IMG/VR virus record: IMGVR_UViG_3300041411_000129
Location: 1-64,000 of that record
Strand: one strand, 5' to 3'
DNA length: 64,000 nucleotides
Shown here: piece after piece, positions 16,203 through 55,085 of the stretch
Numbering within the stretch: position 1 is the first letter of the stretch
How the letters are laid out: the number at the start of each line of letters is the position of its first letter
Notes under the pieces: generated by a model
Databases searched by the model: none
The model's input: the letters and a program-made list of their open reading frames with translations, nothing else
What the model was told of the DNA's origin: nothing
Translations under genes and position numbers: made by a program

Positions 16203-16249
16203 CATAGAGAGCGTGGCGCAAGCCACGCTCTCATTACTTCTTTTTTTTT
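16203..16249. terminator. Bidirectional terminator
   Basis: GAGAGCGTGGC-GCAA-GCCACGCTCTC then T9, between convergent genes. Confidence 0.9.
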
Positions 16250-20802: not shown

Positions 20803-20834
20803 CATAAAGCCGGGACTTCGGTCCCGGCTTTATG
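20803..20834. terminator. Terminator-like hairpin after capsid gene
   Basis: CATAAAGCCGGGAC-TTCG-GTCCCGGCTTTATG. Confidence 0.85.
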
Positions 20835-26694: not shown

Positions 26695-26743
26695 CATAAA
26701 GACCGTGGGTAAACCCACGGTCTTTATGCTCTTTCTTTTTTTT
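26695..26743. terminator. Bidirectional terminator
   Basis: CATAAAGACCGTGGG-TAAA-CCCACGGTCTTTATG plus T-tract. Confidence 0.9.
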
Positions 26744-26768
26744 GTGTAACCACCCTAGCAGTGAGTTA

Positions 26769-27209
26769 TCACATCGAACTAAGCACTTTGATCAGCTCGA
26801 TGATTTCTGGGATGTTCAATCCATTCTTGGCAGCAACCAATGTGGTGACAAACAGAATACCGAGACCAACCAATTTTTGAAGCTCACTCGGCGACCATGG
26901 AGCTGTTGGCGCTTGAGCTGTCGCAGGGGTTTGGAGAGGGGTAGGAGTCGGATTCTGACCACCGGCAGCCACGCCGAGACTCGAGGTCAGAATCATATCC
27001 TGCGTAGCCACGTCCAGGGTTGCGAGTGCATCCTGGATCTCCTTAGCTTCTGCGGTGCTTGGGTCCAACTGACGATCACTTGGAAGGAAGCCGTTGACCA
27101 ATGTGATCAACGTAGGCTCCCAGGTGAAGCCCACCGCCGGGTTCTTTGCCATAAGCGAGATAGCATCTCTTACGTTCATGGGAACCACCAGATGTCGTGT
27201 GAAGTGCAT
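26769..27209 (-). CDS. Hypothetical membrane protein
   Basis: P/T/A linker and C-terminal hydrophobic segment; start uncertain. Confidence 0.65.
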   Translation of the reverse strand: MHFTRHLVVPMNVRDAISLMAKNPAVGFTWEPTLITLVNGFLPSDRQLDPSTAEAKEIQDALATLDVATQDMILTSSLGVAAGGQNPTPTPLQTPATAQAPTAPWSPSELQKLVGLGILFVTTLVAAKNGLNIPEIIELIKVLSSM

Positions 27210-27249
27210 GACGGCCTAAGGCCATCATTAATCTACATTAACTCCCTGT

Positions 27250-27843
27250 TTATGTAAATGCTTTAGCGGCGTCAAGCGCAAGGAATCTGCACACAGTGAT
27301 GCCGTCAACAGAGTGTTCGTCAAGATCCTTGATTGAGATGCCCTCCCCCTCAACGATGTTCACATCATCCATAATAAATTGACGAATTAATTCTTTATCG
27401 GTTTTATATTGCCCTTCCGGACACACCGCTTTCTTTGCCTTACCGGGAGAAACTTCGACGAATTGTAATGTCCGTCTATGTTTATAGCAAGTGTCGTCCA
27501 AATACTTCATGGCCGTTACAAGCGTCCGGTAGGTACTGATGTTTAGATGAGAAAACGGAGCCTCACATCCTACGATGTCTGGGTCGTACTCATCCAGTAT
27601 TTCTGCAAGGCGGTCATTTACAACAAGCAACCGAGCGTCAAGGTTGCCTCTGTTCGATGCAACCCCCGCGTACTTGTTATAAGCTGATTTATCAGCAGTA
27701 ACAGTTTCAGCAAAGATTACAGTCGATATACCTGTACGAAGATCGTGGTCTACAATCGTAAACCCGACCGTATTGGTGCCGTTGTCGATACCGAGGATTC
27801 GATATATCCAATGGCCGCTGAATCCTGGCTTAAGTTCGAACAT
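27250..27843 (-). CDS. ruvC: RuvC-like Holliday junction resolvase
   Basis: ILGIDNG, GCEAP, KKAV, DEHSVDG acidic motifs. Confidence 0.85.
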   Translation of the reverse strand: MFELKPGFSGHWIYRILGIDNGTNTVGFTIVDHDLRTGISTVIFAETVTADKSAYNKYAGVASNRGNLDARLLVVNDRLAEILDEYDPDIVGCEAPFSHLNISTYRTLVTAMKYLDDTCYKHRRTLQFVEVSPGKAKKAVCPEGQYKTDKELIRQFIMDDVNIVEGEGISIKDLDEHSVDGITVCRFLALDAAKAFT

Positions 27844-27851
27844 GACTGGTA

Positions 27852-27878
27852 GGCGCTACCGAAGTAGCGCCACTCCTT
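27852..27878 (-). promoter_or_regulatory. SD plus UUCG hairpin in ruvC initiation region
   Basis: AAGGAG-T-GGCGCTAC-TTCG-GTAGCGCC-8 nt-ATG. Confidence 0.7.
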
Positions 27879-28763
27879 TTAAGCGCCGGTGCCGATCGTT
27901 TCAAGGGTAGGGATCGACTGAGTGCCGAGCATCGGGATTTGGTTACCGACGTCGAATTGCAGAGTCAATTCCTGTTCGTTGTAGTACAACGCCTTGTGGT
28001 CAGCAGCGAACGCGTAGATTTGAGTACCGATCGCTTCGTTGAACTGGGTAGTACCCGAAGTGGTCTGTACGGTAACGGTGCGGTCAGCGGCTGTGCAGAG
28101 TGCGAACTCCGACATGATCGCATATTCCTCGTCACCACCATACAAGATCTTGGACACGTTGACGTACTCTTGCACGTCAGTGGTGGACAAGACGACAGGC
28201 AGCAAGGCAGATACTGCCAGCTTCACGTCAGTGGTGGTAGCGGCGCCGGTAGATGGCAGCTGGATCGGTTCTGGGTACAGGTTCGAGGTGTTAGGCACGA
28301 ACACGACTTCAGTAACGATACCATCTTCGGTAGTGATCTTCTTCATCACTACAGTCACATCATCCGTGGAGACGTGAATACGCAGACCGAAGTAAGCGTA
28401 GTAGTTGACGCCGTCAACCAACATCTCTACACGCAGAGCGTACTTGTCGCGGATGGACTTTGGAAAGTCGTCATCCACAGGACGCATTGCCATCGGCATT
28501 GGGTTGTAGAGCGAAGCGTTGTCGGCGTAGTGGTCCAGGATCGAAGTCTTGGCAATGCCGTTGTTACCGATCGACGCGGTGTGACCTTTGTTACCGGCCA
28601 TGAGGATGCAGAGCTTCACACGCTCAGTGGCGGTAGGACGCGCGTTCTCCTGAACTTCAAGACGCTCGTTCATGGTGGACTTGGCATCGATCACCGGATT
28701 TTGTCCGAGGAGTAACGAAACCAGAAGCTTAGCGCCGTAGACTGTGGCTTGTACCGTATTCAT
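27879..28763 (-). CDS. Virion structural protein (tail/baseplate)
   Basis: 294 aa; GNKGH, KYALR, YYAYF motifs as recalled for phiKZ-like virion proteins. Confidence 0.7.
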   Translation of the reverse strand: MNTVQATVYGAKLLVSLLLGQNPVIDAKSTMNERLEVQENARPTATERVKLCILMAGNKGHTASIGNNGIAKTSILDHYADNASLYNPMPMAMRPVDDDFPKSIRDKYALRVEMLVDGVNYYAYFGLRIHVSTDDVTVVMKKITTEDGIVTEVVFVPNTSNLYPEPIQLPSTGAATTTDVKLAVSALLPVVLSTTDVQEYVNVSKILYGGDEEYAIMSEFALCTAADRTVTVQTTSGTTQFNEAIGTQIYAFAADHKALYYNEQELTLQFDVGNQIPMLGTQSIPTLETIGTGA

Positions 28764-28772
28764 AGCTGTCCC

Positions 28773-29747
28773 TTAACGTGAGAAGAGTGGTGGTGTGGAT
28801 GCGTGGTTAAACGGCAGGTTTCCGGGAACCTTGCTGTCCGAGTACCGGTACGCAATCTTGAGGACACCAGTGATGTTGTTACACCATTTGCTCAGATCGA
28901 GACAGAACACGTAATTGTACGCTGGATCATTCACGGTGTGCGCAGTGCTCACGAAGCCGTTGTAGATGACTTCTGAGCCGTGGACGTTGAAAGGCAGTTC
29001 CTGATCAGGCACTGACACCCATTCGTCGCCAGTGAGACGACGGAGCAGCTGTGGTAGATTTACGAGGTCTGTCCACACGTAGCCAGTCGGAATCGTGTAC
29101 AGATACGACTCAGTTGCCCGACGATCATCGTGGGGCATGAAGGCGTCCGATAACTTCAGTTCACCATCTTCCAGAATCAAATCAACTGGAGGTAAGTCTT
29201 GGTTGCTGTCGCTATAGAACTGACGGATGTCCAACAGCGAATCGATAGTCGCACCGAGCAGCGTCAGAGACTGACGCGTGATCACTTTGAAGCTACCTGT
29301 GAAGATCAAGTGATCGCCAGAGATAATGATCAGGTAATCTGTGTTCTGAAGAGCTGGCAACAGTCCCTCACCGATAGGTTCCTGAGAAACCAGTTCGATG
29401 GTGATTAACGCAGGCTCCAACAACAGACCGTACTGTTCGTGCAGTGCAGTGATGATCGCAGCATCTGTAAGTTCAGGAACGTGAACCGCACAAGGCTCAC
29501 CGTTCAAGATTTGACCGATGTCTACCCGGCGATACATCAGGCGCTGAACTTCTTCACTCCAACCGTTGGTCGAGGCGAACTTGATATCAACCGACGTCAG
29601 TCCTTCCTCACCTTCATTAACTGGAAGACCGAACAGTAACTGCTCAGGTTTCAGCAACCGGTTGTTTGTAGCGTTGATGTAGTCGACCAACAGCTCCTTA
29701 GAGGGCTTGCTGTATCGAGCTATCCTTGGTTTCTTGAGTGTGTACAT
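28773..29747 (-). CDS. Virion structural protein, tail-fibre-family N-terminal domain
   Basis: FGLP, MYRRVDI, FTGS. Confidence 0.7.
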   Translation of the reverse strand: MYTLKKPRIARYSKPSKELLVDYINATNNRLLKPEQLLFGLPVNEGEEGLTSVDIKFASTNGWSEEVQRLMYRRVDIGQILNGEPCAVHVPELTDAAIITALHEQYGLLLEPALITIELVSQEPIGEGLLPALQNTDYLIIISGDHLIFTGSFKVITRQSLTLLGATIDSLLDIRQFYSDSNQDLPPVDLILEDGELKLSDAFMPHDDRRATESYLYTIPTGYVWTDLVNLPQLLRRLTGDEWVSVPDQELPFNVHGSEVIYNGFVSTAHTVNDPAYNYVFCLDLSKWCNNITGVLKIAYRYSDSKVPGNLPFNHASTPPLFSR

Positions 29748-29762
29748 TTATCACCTCAGGCC

Positions 29763-30272
29763 CTATAAAGCAGGTGGCCACAATCCGTCAAGTATATTGT
29801 TCGAGAAAGCGTCGGAGAGGAGGATCGAAGTCCCAGGTTCTCCCAGCGTTACTGTCGTTTCACCAACCCATCTCAACGAATTCGGTTTGGCCTTGAGGAT
29901 GAAGCTGCTACCCGTCACGAGTGCGTTCTCAAAGTCCATGTCCGTAATCACCAAGCCTGAAGCCAACGCGATGTTGTTCATCACGCCCTTTACCGTAATG
30001 GGCGGCGTTAGATCCAGACTCATACCACCGAAGACGTCCGCTACATGCAATCTATTGTAGCGGTACGTCATCTGACCTGTATGCTGTCTATAGATGTTTT
30101 CATCTCTAGACTCATGCGTGGTGATCACCACGTTGGTCACAGCACCTTCAACAATCATCGGAGGACCGATGGATGCGAACTCTGCTCTCAAGTGGAGATT
30201 GAAATGGTTATTGGCCATGATCAGTAACGCCACGGCAGGATCGAACTTCAATAACCGTAGCGTGTCAGTCAT
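29763..30272 (-). CDS. Virion structural protein, tail-fibre family
   Basis: YRYNRL, SLRWVG, NILDGL. Confidence 0.7.
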   Translation of the reverse strand: MTDTLRLLKFDPAVALLIMANNHFNLHLRAEFASIGPPMIVEGAVTNVVITTHESRDENIYRQHTGQMTYRYNRLHVADVFGGMSLDLTPPITVKGVMNNIALASGLVITDMDFENALVTGSSFILKAKPNSLRWVGETTVTLGEPGTSILLSDAFSNNILDGLWPPAL

Positions 30273-30290: not shown

Positions 30291-31250
30291 TTAAGGTGTC
30301 CGAGTGTATTCAACCAAGATGGCGCCACAGTAAGCCAACGAGTTGTTAGCAAACGTCACTGGGAAGGAAGCCTTAGCCCCTACCGCAATAGTAGGCATCG
30401 CAGTTGGTTTAATATCAGTCGCTGCAATCACACATCCCATTTGCGCTGAAAGTAACGCAGCGAGTTGTGTCATGTTAGCGTAGCCTGGTCCACCGAACTT
30501 AACAGGGCGTCTGAAGGTCAATGGCCACGATCTGCGACCGTAGTAGACCGTTAGTGCCCCGATGTATGGAACGCCGTTGAACGTCAACAGGAGCGCTGTG
30601 TTGTCACCGGCATCCTGAGGTCCATTCTCAGATACCTGAGAGATGGTAAACATGTTCGATTGGATCGGCTCTGCCAACGAGGCAGCATTCATCAAGTTCA
30701 GGTGGGTAGCAATCTGATTCTTGATGTTAAGGCTAATGAATGCATCGGTGTGAGACAACGTCAGCGTATTAACCAGAATGCGGCCAGCGATCTCAAGACC
30801 CAGACGGGCAATCACGCAATCAATTTCACCTACCCACCGATACGAGTCGGCGGCTGAGATTACTGCGACTGTACCTAACTGATCGTAGCTGTCTTCAACG
30901 AAGTCAGTTTCACCGATTGGAATCCTGTACGGCCAGAAGAGATTACCCATCAAGTCTTTTGGAGTCGATGGTATCTCAGCCGCTACAGATAGATTCACCC
31001 CAGACAAGAAAGCTGGCAGGCTAAGCCGTTGGTATTCGAATGTGAACGTACCCACTCGATCCCACAGACTAACCGGAGCCTTACTCTTGTCGATCGACAC
31101 CTTAACGCTGGTATTGACACCGCCAAGCGATACAGGTGCTTCTATCTTCAGATGTGTGGCTTTGAGGGGAGCTTTTAACTTCTCCCCAATTTGAGCCCTC
31201 AACGCATCGAGTGGATGCATCTTCAAGAGTGTTTCTGGTGCAATGCTCAT
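30291..31250 (-). CDS. Virion structural protein, two family domains
   Basis: FEYQRL..SYRWVG and VYYGRR..SLAYCG. Confidence 0.7.
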   Translation of the reverse strand: MSIAPETLLKMHPLDALRAQIGEKLKAPLKATHLKIEAPVSLGGVNTSVKVSIDKSKAPVSLWDRVGTFTFEYQRLSLPAFLSGVNLSVAAEIPSTPKDLMGNLFWPYRIPIGETDFVEDSYDQLGTVAVISAADSYRWVGEIDCVIARLGLEIAGRILVNTLTLSHTDAFISLNIKNQIATHLNLMNAASLAEPIQSNMFTISQVSENGPQDAGDNTALLLTFNGVPYIGALTVYYGRRSWPLTFRRPVKFGGPGYANMTQLAALLSAQMGCVIAATDIKPTAMPTIAVGAKASFPVTFANNSLAYCGAILVEYTRTP

Positions 31251-31260
31251 GAGTGCATCC

Positions 31261-33489
31261 TTAGATACCCAGGAAGTTCTTTCTACGCGCTTCGGTCAGG
31301 AGTTCATATCCGACGAGACTATCGTCGATGATCAGACTACCCAGCGGTTGGTCAGGGATCGGAAGATACCCAACAACATCCGTCTGAACAATCTCGCTGA
31401 TGTCAGTCTGAGGACTTTCAATCAACGTCATTCTTGGAAGCGGCATGTCGATCTGTTGTTTCAGCTCGATGCTACCTACAAGCTTGATACCAACGTCAGC
31501 AGGGACCTTAGCCATTACCCGTAGGTCTCTGGCGGTCATGTTGACTTTCGGATACGGCATCAACTGCTGCATGTACATCTTGCCGTTTTCATGAAGATTC
31601 ATGATAGTAGGCAGAGGGTTCTCTACGTCGTAGTAACTGTCGGACCATTCTTTAGGAACGGAAAGCTTTGGGAACTTACCATCAACAATCTTAATAGGAC
31701 TGTCGTTGATCTGACCGATGTATTGAACCGTGTACGAAGACAGCGCTGTCATGACGCGAAGCATCGCAGAGTGGACTTCACGCACCCGCGTTGCGTTAGA
31801 AAGATTACTACCTGTAGCTGTGTTGAAGATCTGGTCAGCCATCATGGAGAATTCGAGATCCCCCATTCCGGTAATGTCGATGCCGACACTATTCAACCAG
31901 TTGTCGTAGTTCATCTCACCCGCAAGGTCAATGCGGATGTCCATGTAGCAATGGTCGATGATCGTGTGCAGCTCACCTTCGGCTTTGTAGTCGCCGTTGT
32001 AGTTCCGCATGTCACGATGATGCAACATCAAAGCTTGAATTTCTTTACAGGTGTCGCGGAATGCTTCGATGCTGACGTACGTACCGATCTGCACCTGAGT
32101 ATCCAGAATGTAGTCGATGTAGTATTCAGGCACCTTCTTACGCGTTGTCATGCTCATCAACCTTTCCTTGGTAGGCAAAGGGATACGACGAACACGACGA
32201 GCGTTCACGATCGGAACATGAGAAAGCTTCTGACCGATAGAACGGTTGTAGGCGTAGAGGTAGAAAATAAAGGCATTCTTAACCGAGAGACGGTAGAGAT
32301 CACCGTTTGCAGGGTTAGTGAACACGACCACTGAATTAAAGCGTTTGTAATGCGCCAAGTAAATCCAATGGTTGAGCAACACCTCTGTCAGCGTGAATGG
32401 CTCAGCATCAGTCCGGTCAACCACGTTCGATTCGAGTACCTTGGTCTTAAGCCGGTTGCCCTTGAACTTGTTCATCTCAGCGAAGACATCTTCTACGACG
32501 TCGTCCTGAATAACGATGTTGTCACGAGCGAGCGGAGTCTCGAGTTCAAGAAGTTCCTGAGGACTCTTAACACTGCTACCCATCGCAGGCTCAATGCCGT
32601 TAATGGTCTTACGAACGAATACAACCAGTGGCTTCAGATCAATCGTCAGCCTTTCGTAGTCGTGCTCAAGATCGTAGCCTGCCAACGAGAAGCCGCGGTC
32701 AGTCAGATACTTCTGAGTAATCAGATCGAACGTCTCGCCACGACCGAGGTTCAAGTTCAAGTAACGGATGTTCCGGTACGTAAACAGTTTCTGCTTCAGC
32801 GTCATGAGATCGAACTCATCACCTACAGCTTGGTTAAAGCTGCTGATGTATTGACGCAGGTGGTAACTGTGGGCCTGATCCGTTTTGCAGACAGCCTTAC
32901 GACTGTTCAATACCACTTGAGTCAGGCGGGTATAAAGGATACCTAAGAACGCTGGATAGTAGAACGGCTCGAACAATGCGTAGTCCGAGTTATCCCACCG
33001 TTTAAAGCAATGGGTGATGTAACGCTGGATATCAGGAATCAACTGTTGCTCTGAGGCCTCCACCAGAGACGCGTCATACTTGAGGATAGTATGGTCAGCG
33101 GCTTGGATAGCTGTCCCTATGTCAATCGGGTTAACGATCCCGTTGATCAGCATTTGTTGATCCGGGTAAGCCGCTACCAATTCCTGATAGTAGCTGCTCC
33201 CGTAGGTGTATTCCTTTCTCGTTGCAGCGTGGATCTTTAAGTTGGCTTGTGTGAAGTCAATGATCGTGTTGTCATCGAGGGAGGTTACTTGCATCATCAC
33301 GTTACTGGAATGATACAAACCCGCGTTGTTCCTGTAGTACTTCCAGGTGTACGGATCATTGAGATCGACAGCTATCCCCGCTTTAAGTAACCGCCGGTTC
33401 ATCATGTCGGCAGTGTAGCTACTTTTAATCACGAGTGTCGCGACAAGCTTTATAATGCTTTTGATGTAAAGCCTGTAGTAGGCATTCAT
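31261..33489 (-). CDS. Virion structural/baseplate protein (phiKZ gp128-like)
   Basis: 742 aa; WKYY, SLDD, LSSYTVQ; divergent from portal gene. Confidence 0.75.
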   Translation of the reverse strand: MNAYYRLYIKSIIKLVATLVIKSSYTADMMNRRLLKAGIAVDLNDPYTWKYYRNNAGLYHSSNVMMQVTSLDDNTIIDFTQANLKIHAATRKEYTYGSSYYQELVAAYPDQQMLINGIVNPIDIGTAIQAADHTILKYDASLVEASEQQLIPDIQRYITHCFKRWDNSDYALFEPFYYPAFLGILYTRLTQVVLNSRKAVCKTDQAHSYHLRQYISSFNQAVGDEFDLMTLKQKLFTYRNIRYLNLNLGRGETFDLITQKYLTDRGFSLAGYDLEHDYERLTIDLKPLVVFVRKTINGIEPAMGSSVKSPQELLELETPLARDNIVIQDDVVEDVFAEMNKFKGNRLKTKVLESNVVDRTDAEPFTLTEVLLNHWIYLAHYKRFNSVVVFTNPANGDLYRLSVKNAFIFYLYAYNRSIGQKLSHVPIVNARRVRRIPLPTKERLMSMTTRKKVPEYYIDYILDTQVQIGTYVSIEAFRDTCKEIQALMLHHRDMRNYNGDYKAEGELHTIIDHCYMDIRIDLAGEMNYDNWLNSVGIDITGMGDLEFSMMADQIFNTATGSNLSNATRVREVHSAMLRVMTALSSYTVQYIGQINDSPIKIVDGKFPKLSVPKEWSDSYYDVENPLPTIMNLHENGKMYMQQLMPYPKVNMTARDLRVMAKVPADVGIKLVGSIELKQQIDMPLPRMTLIESPQTDISEIVQTDVVGYLPIPDQPLGSLIIDDSLVGYELLTEARRKNFLGI

Positions 33490-37701: not shown

Positions 37702-37747
37702 CATACAGAGCGTGGGGCAACCCACGCTCTGCTTACTTCTTTTTTTT
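37702..37747. terminator. Bidirectional terminator, near copy of 16203
   Basis: CAGAGCGTGGG-GCAA-CCCACGCTCTG then T8. Confidence 0.9.
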
Positions 37748-50964: not shown

Positions 50965-50997
50965 CATAAGAGCCGGGGCTTCCCCCGGCTCTCTATG
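50965..50997. terminator. Hairpin between convergent genes
   Basis: CATA-AGAGCCGGGG-CTTC-CCCCGGCTCT-CTATG. Confidence 0.8.
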
Positions 50998-55043: not shown

Positions 55044-55047
55044 ACAG

Positions 55048-55078
55048 CATAAAGCCCGGCCTTGAGCCGGGCTTTATG
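55048..55078. terminator. Hairpin between convergent genes
   Basis: CATAAAGCCCGGC-CTTGA-GCCGGGCTTTATG. Confidence 0.85.
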
Positions 55079-55085
55079 TTTGTCA

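What the first reader, a model, noticed from the sequence alone, without database searches (positions are those of the whole stretch)
27841..27881. Split ribosome-binding site: UUCG hairpin between SD and ruvC start
Seen on the minus strand: stop TAA, AAGGAG, T, GGCGCTAC-TTCG-GTAGCGCC, TACCAGTC, ATG. The SD is 29 nt from the ATG linearly but 9 nt away if the 20-nt cUUCGg hairpin folds out. No closer SD is present. Known: T4 genes 38 and 25 use a hairpin to bring a distant SD to the start codon. Inference: structure-dependent initiation that tunes a potentially toxic resolvase. The hairpin may also stabilise or end the upstream structural transcript.
Basis: partly seen in the sequence, partly recalled or inferred. 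Interest (0 to 1): 0.6.

Follow-up and report, generated by a model that had tools for sequence, protein, structure and literature searches.

The report
Hairpin-split ribosome-binding site before phage ruvC
In an uncultured phiKZ-like giant phage, the ribosome-binding signal of the RuvC resolvase gene is separated from its start codon by a stable RNA hairpin, and eleven related phage lineages keep the same layout with unrelated hairpin sequences, so this looks like a selected "split" ribosome-binding site of the kind known from phage T4 genes 38 and 25.

Summary
On the minus strand the order is TAA (27881-27879), AAGGAG (27878-27873), T, an 8-bp stem with a UUCG loop (27871-27852), 8 nt, then the ATG (27843-27841) of a 197-aa RuvC-like gene. 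The window is part of a 254-kb phiKZ-like jumbo phage from IMG/VR. The junction lies between homologues of phiKZ gp139 (virion protein) and gp140 (RuvC).

The main evidence is comparative. A clade of uncultured relatives carries 11 hairpins that are unrelated in sequence. All end 7-9 nt before the aligned ruvC ATG, and 10 of the 11 have a strong SD within -1 to 2 nt of the hairpin's 5' side. The effective SD-ATG spacing is 6-10 nt, and the genome's normal range is 5-11 nt. Within lineages the stems hardly vary (1 of 56 columns) while the loops do (7 of 16). Six stem types contain G·U pairs on the sense strand. Cultured relatives and about 50 more distant RuvC loci have an ordinary SD or none. 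In this genome every other strong intergenic hairpin with a recognisable SD and a reliable start has the reverse order, hairpin then SD then ATG.

Verdict: a real split ribosome-binding site, a new member of a known kind. Whether the hairpin also ends or stabilises the upstream transcript is untested, as is the claim that it tunes a toxic resolvase. The UUCG loop itself is not conserved.

The parts
27879..28763 (-). Upstream gene: 294-aa virion structural protein (DUF7208, homologue of 201phi2-1 gp224 / phiKZ gp139). Its TAA stop is at 27881-27879.
   Evidence: PF23838 8.8e-78 and phrog_3315 7.5e-71. tblastn finds 273 phiKZ-like phages. The 201phi2-1 gp224 annotation says it was identified in the virion by mass spectrometry and is similar to phiKZ gp139.
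27873..27878 (-). Shine-Dalgarno sequence AAGGAG, directly after the stop codon, 29 nt upstream of the ruvC ATG in linear sequence.
   Evidence: It matches the genome's own SD consensus. The AGGAG core is invariant within the lineage while the base 5' of it varies. A strong SD sits in the same place relative to the hairpin in 10 of 11 hairpin types.
27852..27871 (-). Hairpin: 8-bp GC-rich stem (27871-27864 pairs with 27859-27852) capped by a UUCG tetraloop (27863-27860).
   Evidence: Energy -14.4 kcal/mol. Base-pair probability 0.99. Single copy in the genome. Replaced by 10 other unrelated stems at the same position in relatives.
27844..27851 (-). 8-nt single-stranded spacer between the hairpin and the start codon.
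   Evidence: This spacer is 7-9 nt in all 19 distinct hairpin-bearing sequences.
27841..27843 (-). ATG start codon of ruvC.
   Evidence: It is the only candidate start in the open frame. Met1 is invariant and aligned in 10 divergent RuvC proteins.
27250..27843 (-). ruvC-like Holliday-junction resolvase gene, 197 aa (homologue of 201phi2-1 gp225 / phiKZ gp140).
   Evidence: PF02075 at 33.5 bits (cut-off 22.2) and phrog_159 2.4e-17. D20, E94, E176-H177 and D180 are invariant. Synteny with the DUF7208 gene is kept in cultured phages.

Best explanation
This is a split (noncontiguous) ribosome-binding site. In the mRNA that runs from the gp139-like virion gene into ruvC, the 20-nt hairpin folds. 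Folding brings AAGGAG (27878-27873) to an effective distance of about 9 nt from the ruvC AUG. A 30S subunit can then pair its anti-SD with AAGGAG and place the AUG in the P site while the intact hairpin protrudes, as shown for T4 genes 38 and 25. The arrangement most likely arose when a hairpin came to lie in the 7-8-nt spacer of an ancestral ordinary site, the state kept in cultured relatives, where the SD overlaps or directly follows the stop codon. The hairpin resembles this genome's many intergenic hairpins, so it probably has a second role on the upstream transcript as a partial terminator or a 3'-end protector. That would set the ratio of virion protein to resolvase. Shown: the anatomy, and the selection on SD, stem pairing and both spacings. 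Inferred: that the ribosome uses the SD across the folded hairpin. Speculative: the second role and the direction of any tuning.
For: (1) The anatomy is exact, the hairpin is stable, and there is no nearer SD or other start. (2) IMG/VR and metagenome relatives with 55-82% identity in the upstream protein carry 11 stems whose anchored sequences are only 32% identical on average for the nine compared. All end 7-9 nt before the aligned ATG. Ten of the 11 have AAGGAG, AGGAGG or GGAG within -1 to 2 nt of the 5' side. Each segment folds better than at least 99% of its shuffles. (3) The stop-to-SD distance varies from 0 to 17 nt and the hairpin from 20 to 28 nt. The unit is therefore anchored to the ATG, not to the stop codon. 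(4) Within three lineages only 1 of 56 stem columns varies, and that change keeps pairing (A-U to G·U). By contrast 7 of 16 loop columns vary (Fisher p = 5e-5). L064 and L066 differ by U·G versus U-A at one pair. (5) G·U pairs on the sense strand occur in 6 of 11 stem types, so selection acts on the sense RNA and not on DNA or the antisense strand. (6) The effective spacing of 6-10 nt falls within the genome's own aligned SD spacing (5-11 nt, mode 6-7). (7) In the 254-kb genome this is the only true gene start with the order SD, hairpin, start. Other strong hairpins upstream of genes with a recognisable SD and a reliable start have the order hairpin, SD, ATG. (8) Cultured relatives (RP31, 201phi2-1, DT01, Xoo-sp14, Noxifer, Eowyn) and about 50 distant RuvC loci have an ordinary SD or none, and never this layout. 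(9) There is experimental precedent for the mechanism: T4 genes 38 and 25, and the thrS and rpmE split sites (PMC3014915, PMC7297116, PMC3936740).
Against: There is no experimental or expression evidence: no RNA runs were listed. One lineage (L014/L038/L048) has a very stable hairpin 8 nt before the ATG but no clear SD 5' of it, so the hairpin can persist without the bridge. The closing base pair of a helix adds some physical distance, so the true effective spacing exceeds the nominal 9 nt. The predicted accessibility of the SD is only moderate (0.13-0.70 unpaired), because it can pair with upstream coding sequence in silico. The stems were located by searching for pairing, so '72 of 72 paired' is by construction. 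The real evidence is their recurrence, position and energy relative to shuffles. The lineages share ancestry, so the 11 stem types are not 11 independent origins.
Confidence: 0.65

Rival explanations
1. The hairpin is only a transcription terminator or 3'-end stabiliser for the upstream late virion gene. On this view ruvC is translated poorly, without an SD or by re-initiation, from rare read-through transcripts, and the SD in front of the hairpin has no function for ruvC.
For: This genome has 78 strong intergenic hairpins of the same style (GC-rich stems, with UUCG the commonest tetraloop), mostly after gene ends. 201phi2-1 has 132 mapped terminators, many of them factor-independent hairpins (PMC11512511). 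The L038 lineage keeps the hairpin without an SD.
Against: A relic SD would decay. Instead the SD core is conserved in 10 of 11 stem types and always abuts the hairpin, while the flanks vary. The hairpin-to-ATG distance is fixed at 7-9 nt, which a terminator does not need. No U tract follows on the sense strand. Every other such hairpin in the genome that lies upstream of a gene with a recognisable SD and a reliable start places that SD after the hairpin.
Confidence: 0.17
2. The hairpin is a negative element. It holds the SD too far from the AUG and must melt for initiation, so it represses ruvC translation instead of assembling the ribosome-binding site.
For: Stable structure near a start codon usually inhibits initiation. 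Relatives do without the hairpin. A resolvase plausibly needs low expression (inference only).
Against: If the hairpin melted, the SD would be 29 nt from the AUG and useless, so the conserved SD and the fixed spacings would have no explanation. In T4 gene 25, destabilising the equivalent stem lowers translation (PMC3014915).
Confidence: 0.1
3. It is a DNA-level palindrome, for example a protein-binding site or a cruciform, or a terminator for antisense (+ strand) transcription.
For: It is a perfect inverted repeat in DNA. The simple scan calls it terminator-like on the + strand, because the complement of the stop codon and SD is T-rich.
Against: The stems are unrelated in sequence between lineages, so there is no shared binding site. 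Six of 11 stem types need G·U pairs, which form only in sense-strand RNA and would be A/C mismatches on the other strand or in DNA. Stems of 8-12 bp are short for cruciform extrusion. The convergent + strand genes already end at the strong bidirectional hairpin at 26695-26728.
Confidence: 0.03
4. It is a chance juxtaposition of an SD-like hexamer, a hairpin and a start codon.
For: AAGGAG occurs 83 times on the two strands of the genome, and only 19 of these precede a start, so the hexamer alone is not rare.
Against: The same three-part layout recurs with unrelated sequences in the relatives. It is unique in this genome and absent outside the clade.
Confidence: 0.01

Closest known systems
Split translation-initiation region of bacteriophage T4 gene 25, at the gene 26-25 junction (Nivinskas et al. 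1999; Malys and Nivinskas 2009; reviewed in PMC3014915)
   Same: The SD is far from the AUG in linear sequence (27 nt in T4, 29 nt here). A stable hairpin lies wholly between them and gives a functional spacing (11 nt in T4, 9 nt here). The site is at an intercistronic junction of late genes in a large myovirus. The arrangement is restricted to one clade and absent from more distant relatives.
   Different: The phage family (phiKZ-like jumbo phage) and the genes (virion protein to RuvC) are unrelated. There is no sequence similarity. Here the stem sequence has turned over completely between lineages. The T4 case is proven by mutagenesis, reporters and DMS probing, whereas this one rests on comparative evidence only.
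Split ribosome-binding site of T4 gene 38 (Gold 1988, as cited in PMC7297116 and PMC3014915)
   Same: A hairpin between the SD and the AUG shortens the effective spacing (22 to 5 nt).
   Different: The gene and the geometry differ. No homology.
E. coli thrS operator and rpmE noncontiguous initiation regions (Sacerdot et al. 1998; PMC7297116; modelled in PMC3936740)
   Same: The ribosome accommodates a stable hairpin inside its binding site without unfolding it.
   Different: In those cases the hairpin lies upstream of the SD, between a standby or enhancer segment and the SD-AUG, and it is an operator for an autoregulatory protein. Here it lies between the SD and the AUG, and no regulator is indicated.
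Hairpin terminators of phiKZ-like phages and the hairpin-plus-TATG modules of this genome (PMC11512511; PMC4666361)
   Same: It is a GC-rich, tetraloop-capped hairpin just after a late structural gene, the same style as the 78 strong intergenic hairpins of this genome.
   Different: It has no U tract and no TATGC motif after it. It is the weakest of its class in this region of the genome. It is the only one placed between an SD and a start codon.

Membership tests
Split (hairpin-bridged) SD-AUG ribosome-binding site, T4 gene 38/25 type | The SD-like sequence lies too far from the start codon to act in linear sequence (more than about 15 nt). | tested here: met
   The spacer between AAGGAG and ATG is 29 nt. 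The genome's normal aligned spacing is 5-11 nt.
Split (hairpin-bridged) SD-AUG ribosome-binding site, T4 gene 38/25 type | A stable hairpin lies entirely between the SD and the start, and looping it out restores a functional spacing. | tested here: met
   The hairpin has an 8-bp stem and a UUCG loop, an energy of -14.4 kcal/mol and a pair probability of 0.99. The residual spacing is 1 + 8 = 9 nt.
Split (hairpin-bridged) SD-AUG ribosome-binding site, T4 gene 38/25 type | No alternative SD lies near the start and there is no alternative start codon. | tested here: met
   There is no SD motif in the 22 nt before the ATG. An in-frame TAG lies in the 3' arm and this is the only start candidate. Met1 is invariant in the alignment.
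Split (hairpin-bridged) SD-AUG ribosome-binding site, T4 gene 38/25 type | The structure and geometry are conserved in relatives despite sequence change. | tested here: met
   There are 11 unrelated stems. The SD-to-hairpin distance is -1 to 2 nt and the hairpin-to-ATG distance is 7-9 nt. Stem columns vary in 1 of 56 cases against 7 of 16 for loops. One lineage lacks the SD.
Split (hairpin-bridged) SD-AUG ribosome-binding site, T4 gene 38/25 type | Destabilising the stem or mutating the SD lowers translation, and compensatory changes restore it. | not testable with these tools
   This needs reporter fusions, toeprinting or chemical probing.
Intrinsic (factor-independent) transcription terminator | A GC-rich hairpin. 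| tested here: met
   Six of the 8 pairs are G-C.
Intrinsic (factor-independent) transcription terminator | A U tract directly after the stem on the transcribed (sense) strand. | tested here: not met
   The sense-strand tail is TACCAGTC. Only the antisense strand has a T-rich tail.
Intrinsic (factor-independent) transcription terminator | Transcript 3' ends map at the hairpin. | not testable with these tools
   No RNA run was listed for this sequence.
Hairpin plus TATG (phiKZ-type late promoter) module of this genome | A TATG(C) motif abuts the 3' arm, and an SD and start follow further downstream. | tested here: not met
   The window has TCATG. Where relatives have TATG, its ATG is the ruvC start codon, and the phiKZ late start site is the G of TATG, which would remove that start codon (PMC4666361).
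RuvC-like Holliday-junction resolvase (PF02075), for the downstream gene | The profile match exceeds the curated cut-off and the acidic catalytic residues are conserved. | tested here: met
   33.5 bits against 22.2; phrog_159 at 2.4e-17. D20, E94 and D180 (with E176-H177) are invariant in 10 relatives.
Rfam RNA families | A match to any curated covariance model. | tested here: not met
   No hits at E up to 1 in 27000-28800.

The most novel reading that the evidence does not exclude
The hairpin may be one of the phage's own terminator or stabiliser hairpins built into a ribosome-binding site, so that a single RNA structure has two coupled jobs. It would end or protect most transcripts of the abundant virion protein gene. 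On the minority of read-through transcripts it would be the element that assembles the ruvC ribosome-binding site. This would fix a low, structure-dependent ratio of resolvase to virion protein. Such a combined terminator and ribosome-binding-site bridge has not been described for the T4 cases.
Probability: 0.3. Interest if true: 0.6.

Novelty: new member of a known kind. Interest (0 to 1): 0.5.

Why it matters
Natural ribosome-binding sites with a hairpin between the SD and the AUG are textbook curiosities known from very few cases, chiefly T4 genes 38 and 25. This case is in an unrelated phage group, phiKZ-like jumbo phages. It comes with unusually rich natural variation: 11 different stems of 8-12 bp, loops of 3-12 nt, and fixed flanking distances. 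That variation amounts to a ready-made mutational series for asking what hairpin sizes and spacings a 30S subunit tolerates between the SD and the P site. There are practical consequences too. Gene callers and translation-rate predictors that demand a nearby SD or an unstructured site would mis-score this start. Phage engineers who move such junctions need to keep the hairpin with the gene. If the hairpin is also a terminator, the junction shows how a phage sets the ratio of a structural protein to a nuclease with one element.

Tried and rejected
- **Nucleotide search of cultured phages:** a search with 2 kb around the site found nothing. Protein searches were needed.
- **Expression data:** no RNA sequencing run was listed, so read laying was not used and transcript ends could not be mapped.
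- **Cross-lineage alignment:** MAFFT with RNAalifold and MAFFT on equal-length hairpins misaligned the stems, because they share no sequence. Formal covariation tools (fold_alignment, the count of structure pairs, covariance models) were therefore not usable across lineages. I used a structure-anchored tally in Python instead, with the caveat that the stems were found by pairing.
- **Promoter at the start codon (rejected):** six lineages have TATG at the start. However, the phiKZ late transcription start is the G of TATG (PMC4666361), which would delete the AUG. The window itself has TCATG.
- **Repeat or mobile element (rejected):** the hairpin is single copy in the genome.
- **Second instance in the same genome:** none is convincing. 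The other matches are internal to ORFs or weak.
- **Rfam:** no match.
- **+ strand terminator (rejected):** the call is a by-product of the SD complement, and sense-strand G·U pairs argue against it.
- **Start-stop mini-ORF (GTG-TAA or GTG-TGA):** this sits in the 5' arm of the L028-type lineages only. It is not general and was not pursued.
- timed out and was rewritten. One search stopped on a regular expression and was fixed.
Full report
**What is there.** Reading window 27600-28100 on the minus strand confirms the finding base for base.
- The 294-aa ORF 27879-28763 ends with TAA (27881-27879).
- AAGGAG follows at 27878-27873, then a single T.
- Next is an 8-bp GC-rich stem closed by a C-G pair around a UUCG loop (27871-27852).
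- The 8-nt spacer TACCAGTC follows, then the ATG (27843-27841) of ORF 27250-27843.
- The linear SD-ATG distance is 29 nt, or 9 nt without the hairpin.
- The hairpin folds at -14.4 kcal/mol and has a base-pair probability of 0.99 in a 150-nt context.
- The broader 100-nt region is not unusually structured (z = 0.47), so only the local hairpin stands out.

**The genes and the genome.**
- The downstream protein is a RuvC-like resolvase (PF02075 at 33.5 bits against a cut-off of 22.2; phrog_159). D20, E94, E176-H177 and D180 are invariant among relatives.
- The upstream protein is a DUF7208 virion structural protein (8.8e-78). It is the homologue of 201phi2-1 gp224, whose record says it was found in the virion by mass spectrometry and resembles phiKZ gp139. 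The RuvC gene corresponds to 201phi2-1 gp225 / phiKZ gp140.
- The window is the first 64 kb of a 253,921-bp IMG/VR virus with direct terminal repeats.
- No cultured phage matches at the nucleotide level. Proteins are at most 36% identical to cultured phiKZ-like phages.

**Is the ATG the real start, and is AAGGAG a real SD?**
- An in-frame TAG lies in the 3' arm of the hairpin, so this ATG is the only ATG/GTG/TTG available.
- In an alignment of ten divergent RuvC proteins the initiator Met is an invariant, aligned column, 12-15 residues before the catalytic GIDNG motif.
- Of 166 long ORFs in the genome whose first start is ATG, 114 have an SD motif. The aligned spacing is 5-11 nt for nearly all, with a mode of 6-7 nt. 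AAGGAG, GAGG and AGGAG are typical.
- ruvC has no such motif in the 22 nt before its ATG. With the hairpin looped out, its spacing of 9 nt is within the normal range.
- AAGGAG alone is not rare: it occurs 83 times on both strands, and 19 of these precede a start. This single sequence cannot exclude coincidence.

**Comparative evidence, which is decisive.** Searches of IMG/VR and of metagenome contigs used the DUF7208 protein, its alignment A1 and the RuvC alignment A3. They returned a clade of uncultured relatives with 55-100% identity in the upstream protein. This clade is separated from cultured phages by a branch with 100/100 support.
- *Hairpin types.* Reading the junction in each relative gives 19 distinct hairpin-bearing sequences in 11 types whose stems are unrelated. 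Anchored stems of the nine types compared are 32% identical on average. Representative segments are:
  - window:27841-27879:-
  - L044:2393-2436
  - L027:2384-2429
  - L028:2422-2467
  - L032:2383-2426
  - L047:2385-2425
  - L049:2399-2443
  - L037:2412-2457
  - L038:2384-2426
  - the stretches ending at the ATG at position 1177 of L064 and of L069
- *Structure.* Stems are 8-12 bp, loops 3-12 nt and energies -10.7 to -20.8 kcal/mol. Each SD-to-ATG segment folds better than at least 99% of its shuffles. Pair probabilities are at least 0.93.
- *Fixed distances.* Every hairpin ends 7-9 nt before the aligned ATG. In ten of the eleven types a strong SD (AAGGAGG, AAGGAG, AGGAGG or GGAG) ends within -1 to 2 nt of the 5' arm. 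The effective spacing is 6-10 nt.
- *Variable distances.* The distance from the upstream stop codon to the SD ranges from 0 to 17 nt, and hairpin length from 20 to 28 nt. The unit is therefore anchored on the start codon, not on the stop.
- *Substitution pattern.* Within three lineages that have several members, only one of 56 stem columns varies, and that change is A-U to G·U. By contrast 7 of 16 loop columns and 4 of 24 spacer columns vary (Fisher p = 5e-5 for stem against loop). L064 and L066 differ by U·G versus U-A at one pair.
- *Strand.* Six stem types contain G·U pairs on the sense strand. These would be A/C mismatches in DNA or in the antisense RNA, so selection acts on the mRNA.
- *Loop.* The UUCG loop is not conserved. 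L040 has the window's stem with UUAG. Other lineages have GCGA, GAAA or GUAA loops, or longer ones.

**Where the layout is absent.**
- Cultured relatives keep the gp139-gp140 synteny but have a short junction. Most have an ordinary SD overlapping or just after the stop codon and 7-8 nt before the ATG (RP31, 201phi2-1, Xoo-sp14, DT01). In Noxifer and Eowyn the genes overlap.
- About 50 more distant RuvC loci in IMG/VR show an ordinary SD or none, and never the order SD, hairpin, ATG.
- Inside the clade, L035/L036/L050 have no hairpin and a normal AAGGGG with a 7-nt spacer. Their position in the tree is unresolved, so a single gain with or without a later loss cannot be decided.
- L014/L038/L048 keep a very stable hairpin 8 nt before the ATG but lack a clear SD on its 5' side. 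This is the main exception.

**Context in the same genome.**
- The 254-kb genome has 131 hairpins at or below -12 kcal/mol, 78 of them intergenic. UUCG is the commonest tetraloop, and many hairpins are followed directly by a TATGC(C/T)G motif. This fits the phiKZ late promoter TATG, whose G is the transcription start (PMC4666361).
- Where such hairpins lie upstream of genes that have a recognisable SD and a reliable start, the order is hairpin, then promoter-like motif, then SD, then ATG.
- A scan for the order SD, hairpin, start found only ruvC as a true gene start with a strong SD and a stable stem.
- The ruvC hairpin is single copy and matches no Rfam family.
- It has no U tract on the sense strand. 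A terminator-like call on the + strand is a by-product of the SD's complement.

**Mechanism.** The best explanation is a split ribosome-binding site of the T4 gene 38/25 kind.
- For those genes, a review reports that an intervening hairpin reduces the SD-AUG spacing from 22 to 5 nt and from 27 to 11 nt. It also reports that destabilising mutations lower translation, and that the gene 25 arrangement exists only in the close T-even phages (PMC3014915). PMC7297116 gives the same account.
- Ribosomes are also known to accommodate stable hairpins in the thrS and rpmE sites.
- Here the ancestral state, an SD at the stop codon and 7-8 nt before the ATG, appears to have been interrupted by a hairpin. 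The hairpin is tolerated because it folds out, and afterwards SD, pairing and both short distances stayed under selection.
- Why a hairpin is there at all is not shown. Its likeness to the genome's other intergenic hairpins suggests a partial terminator or 3'-end protector for the abundant virion protein mRNA. On that view ruvC is made only from read-through transcripts that carry the folded bridge.
- I put 0.65 on use of the SD across the folded hairpin and about 0.3 on the additional transcript-level role. 'Tuning a toxic resolvase' is inference only.

**Rivals.**
- A pure terminator or stabiliser with a functionless SD (0.17) does not explain the conserved SD or the fixed 7-9 nt distance.
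- A purely repressive hairpin (0.10) leaves the SD useless at 29 nt from the start.
- A DNA-level or antisense element (0.03) is contradicted by the sense-strand G·U pairs and by the unrelated stem sequences.
- Chance (0.01) is excluded by the recurrence of the layout.

**Limits.**
- There are no expression data: none was listed.
- Formal covariation tools could not be applied across lineages, because MAFFT cannot align unrelated stems. The pairing tally is structure-anchored and partly circular.
- The lineages are related, so counts of stem types are not counts of independent events.

**Verdict.** This is a new member of a known kind, with moderate interest (0.5).

Noticed in passing
window 16207-16232, 37706-37731, 50969-50992 (and many more in the genome, e.g. 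G000 67795-67816, 120654-120680, 215266-215289): Strong GC-rich tetraloop hairpins are followed directly by TATGC(C/T)G on one or both strands. They look like terminator-plus-late-promoter modules, because the phiKZ late promoter is TATG with its G at +1. The 254-kb genome has 78 strong intergenic hairpins, and UUCG is the commonest tetraloop.
   Followed up: partly
window 20803-20834, 26695-26728, 55046-55080 (also G000 144097-144127, 172531-172561, 199837-199867, 236977-237007, 246877-246905): This is a repeated palindromic family whose arms begin CATAAAG and end CTTTATG, often with a GCCCGGC core. The hairpin carries TATG on both strands. It sits between convergent or tandem transcription units and looks like a bidirectional terminator-promoter element.
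   Followed up: no
window 28773-29747, 29763-30272, 30291-31250 (minus strand): Three tandem paralogous DUF7941 / phrog_1037 virion structural genes lie upstream of the DUF7208 gene. A 742-aa phrog_3222 protein (31261-33489) precedes them.
   Followed up: no
L014:3880-3926 (= L038, L048): One lineage keeps a very stable hairpin (-19.7 kcal/mol, or -27.6 with an extended stem) 8 nt before the ruvC ATG but has no clear SD 5' of it. A GGGAGG lies buried in the 5' arm and loop. How ruvC is initiated there is unexplained.
   Followed up: partly
L028:2430-2440, L031, L045: In this lineage the 5' arm of the hairpin contains a GTG followed directly by TAA or TGA, 4 nt after the SD. This is a possible start-stop mini-ORF. 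It is not seen in other lineages.
   Followed up: no
L047:2414-2425 (= L068): A second in-frame ATG abuts the 3' arm of the hairpin, 9 nt before the aligned ruvC ATG. Only the downstream ATG has the conserved spacing.
   Followed up: no
L017:2025-2065 (Pseudomonas phage pPa_SNUABM_DT01): This cultured relative has a weak 5-bp hairpin spanning the upstream stop codon, with the SD after it and 8 nt before the ruvC ATG. This is the opposite order to the window's clade.
   Followed up: no
window 26742-27257 (+) versus 26769-27209 (-): Two long ORFs overlap on opposite strands just downstream of ruvC. Neither has a family match. The minus-strand ORF fits the gene direction, and the convergent units meet at the 26695-26728 hairpin.
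   Followed up: no
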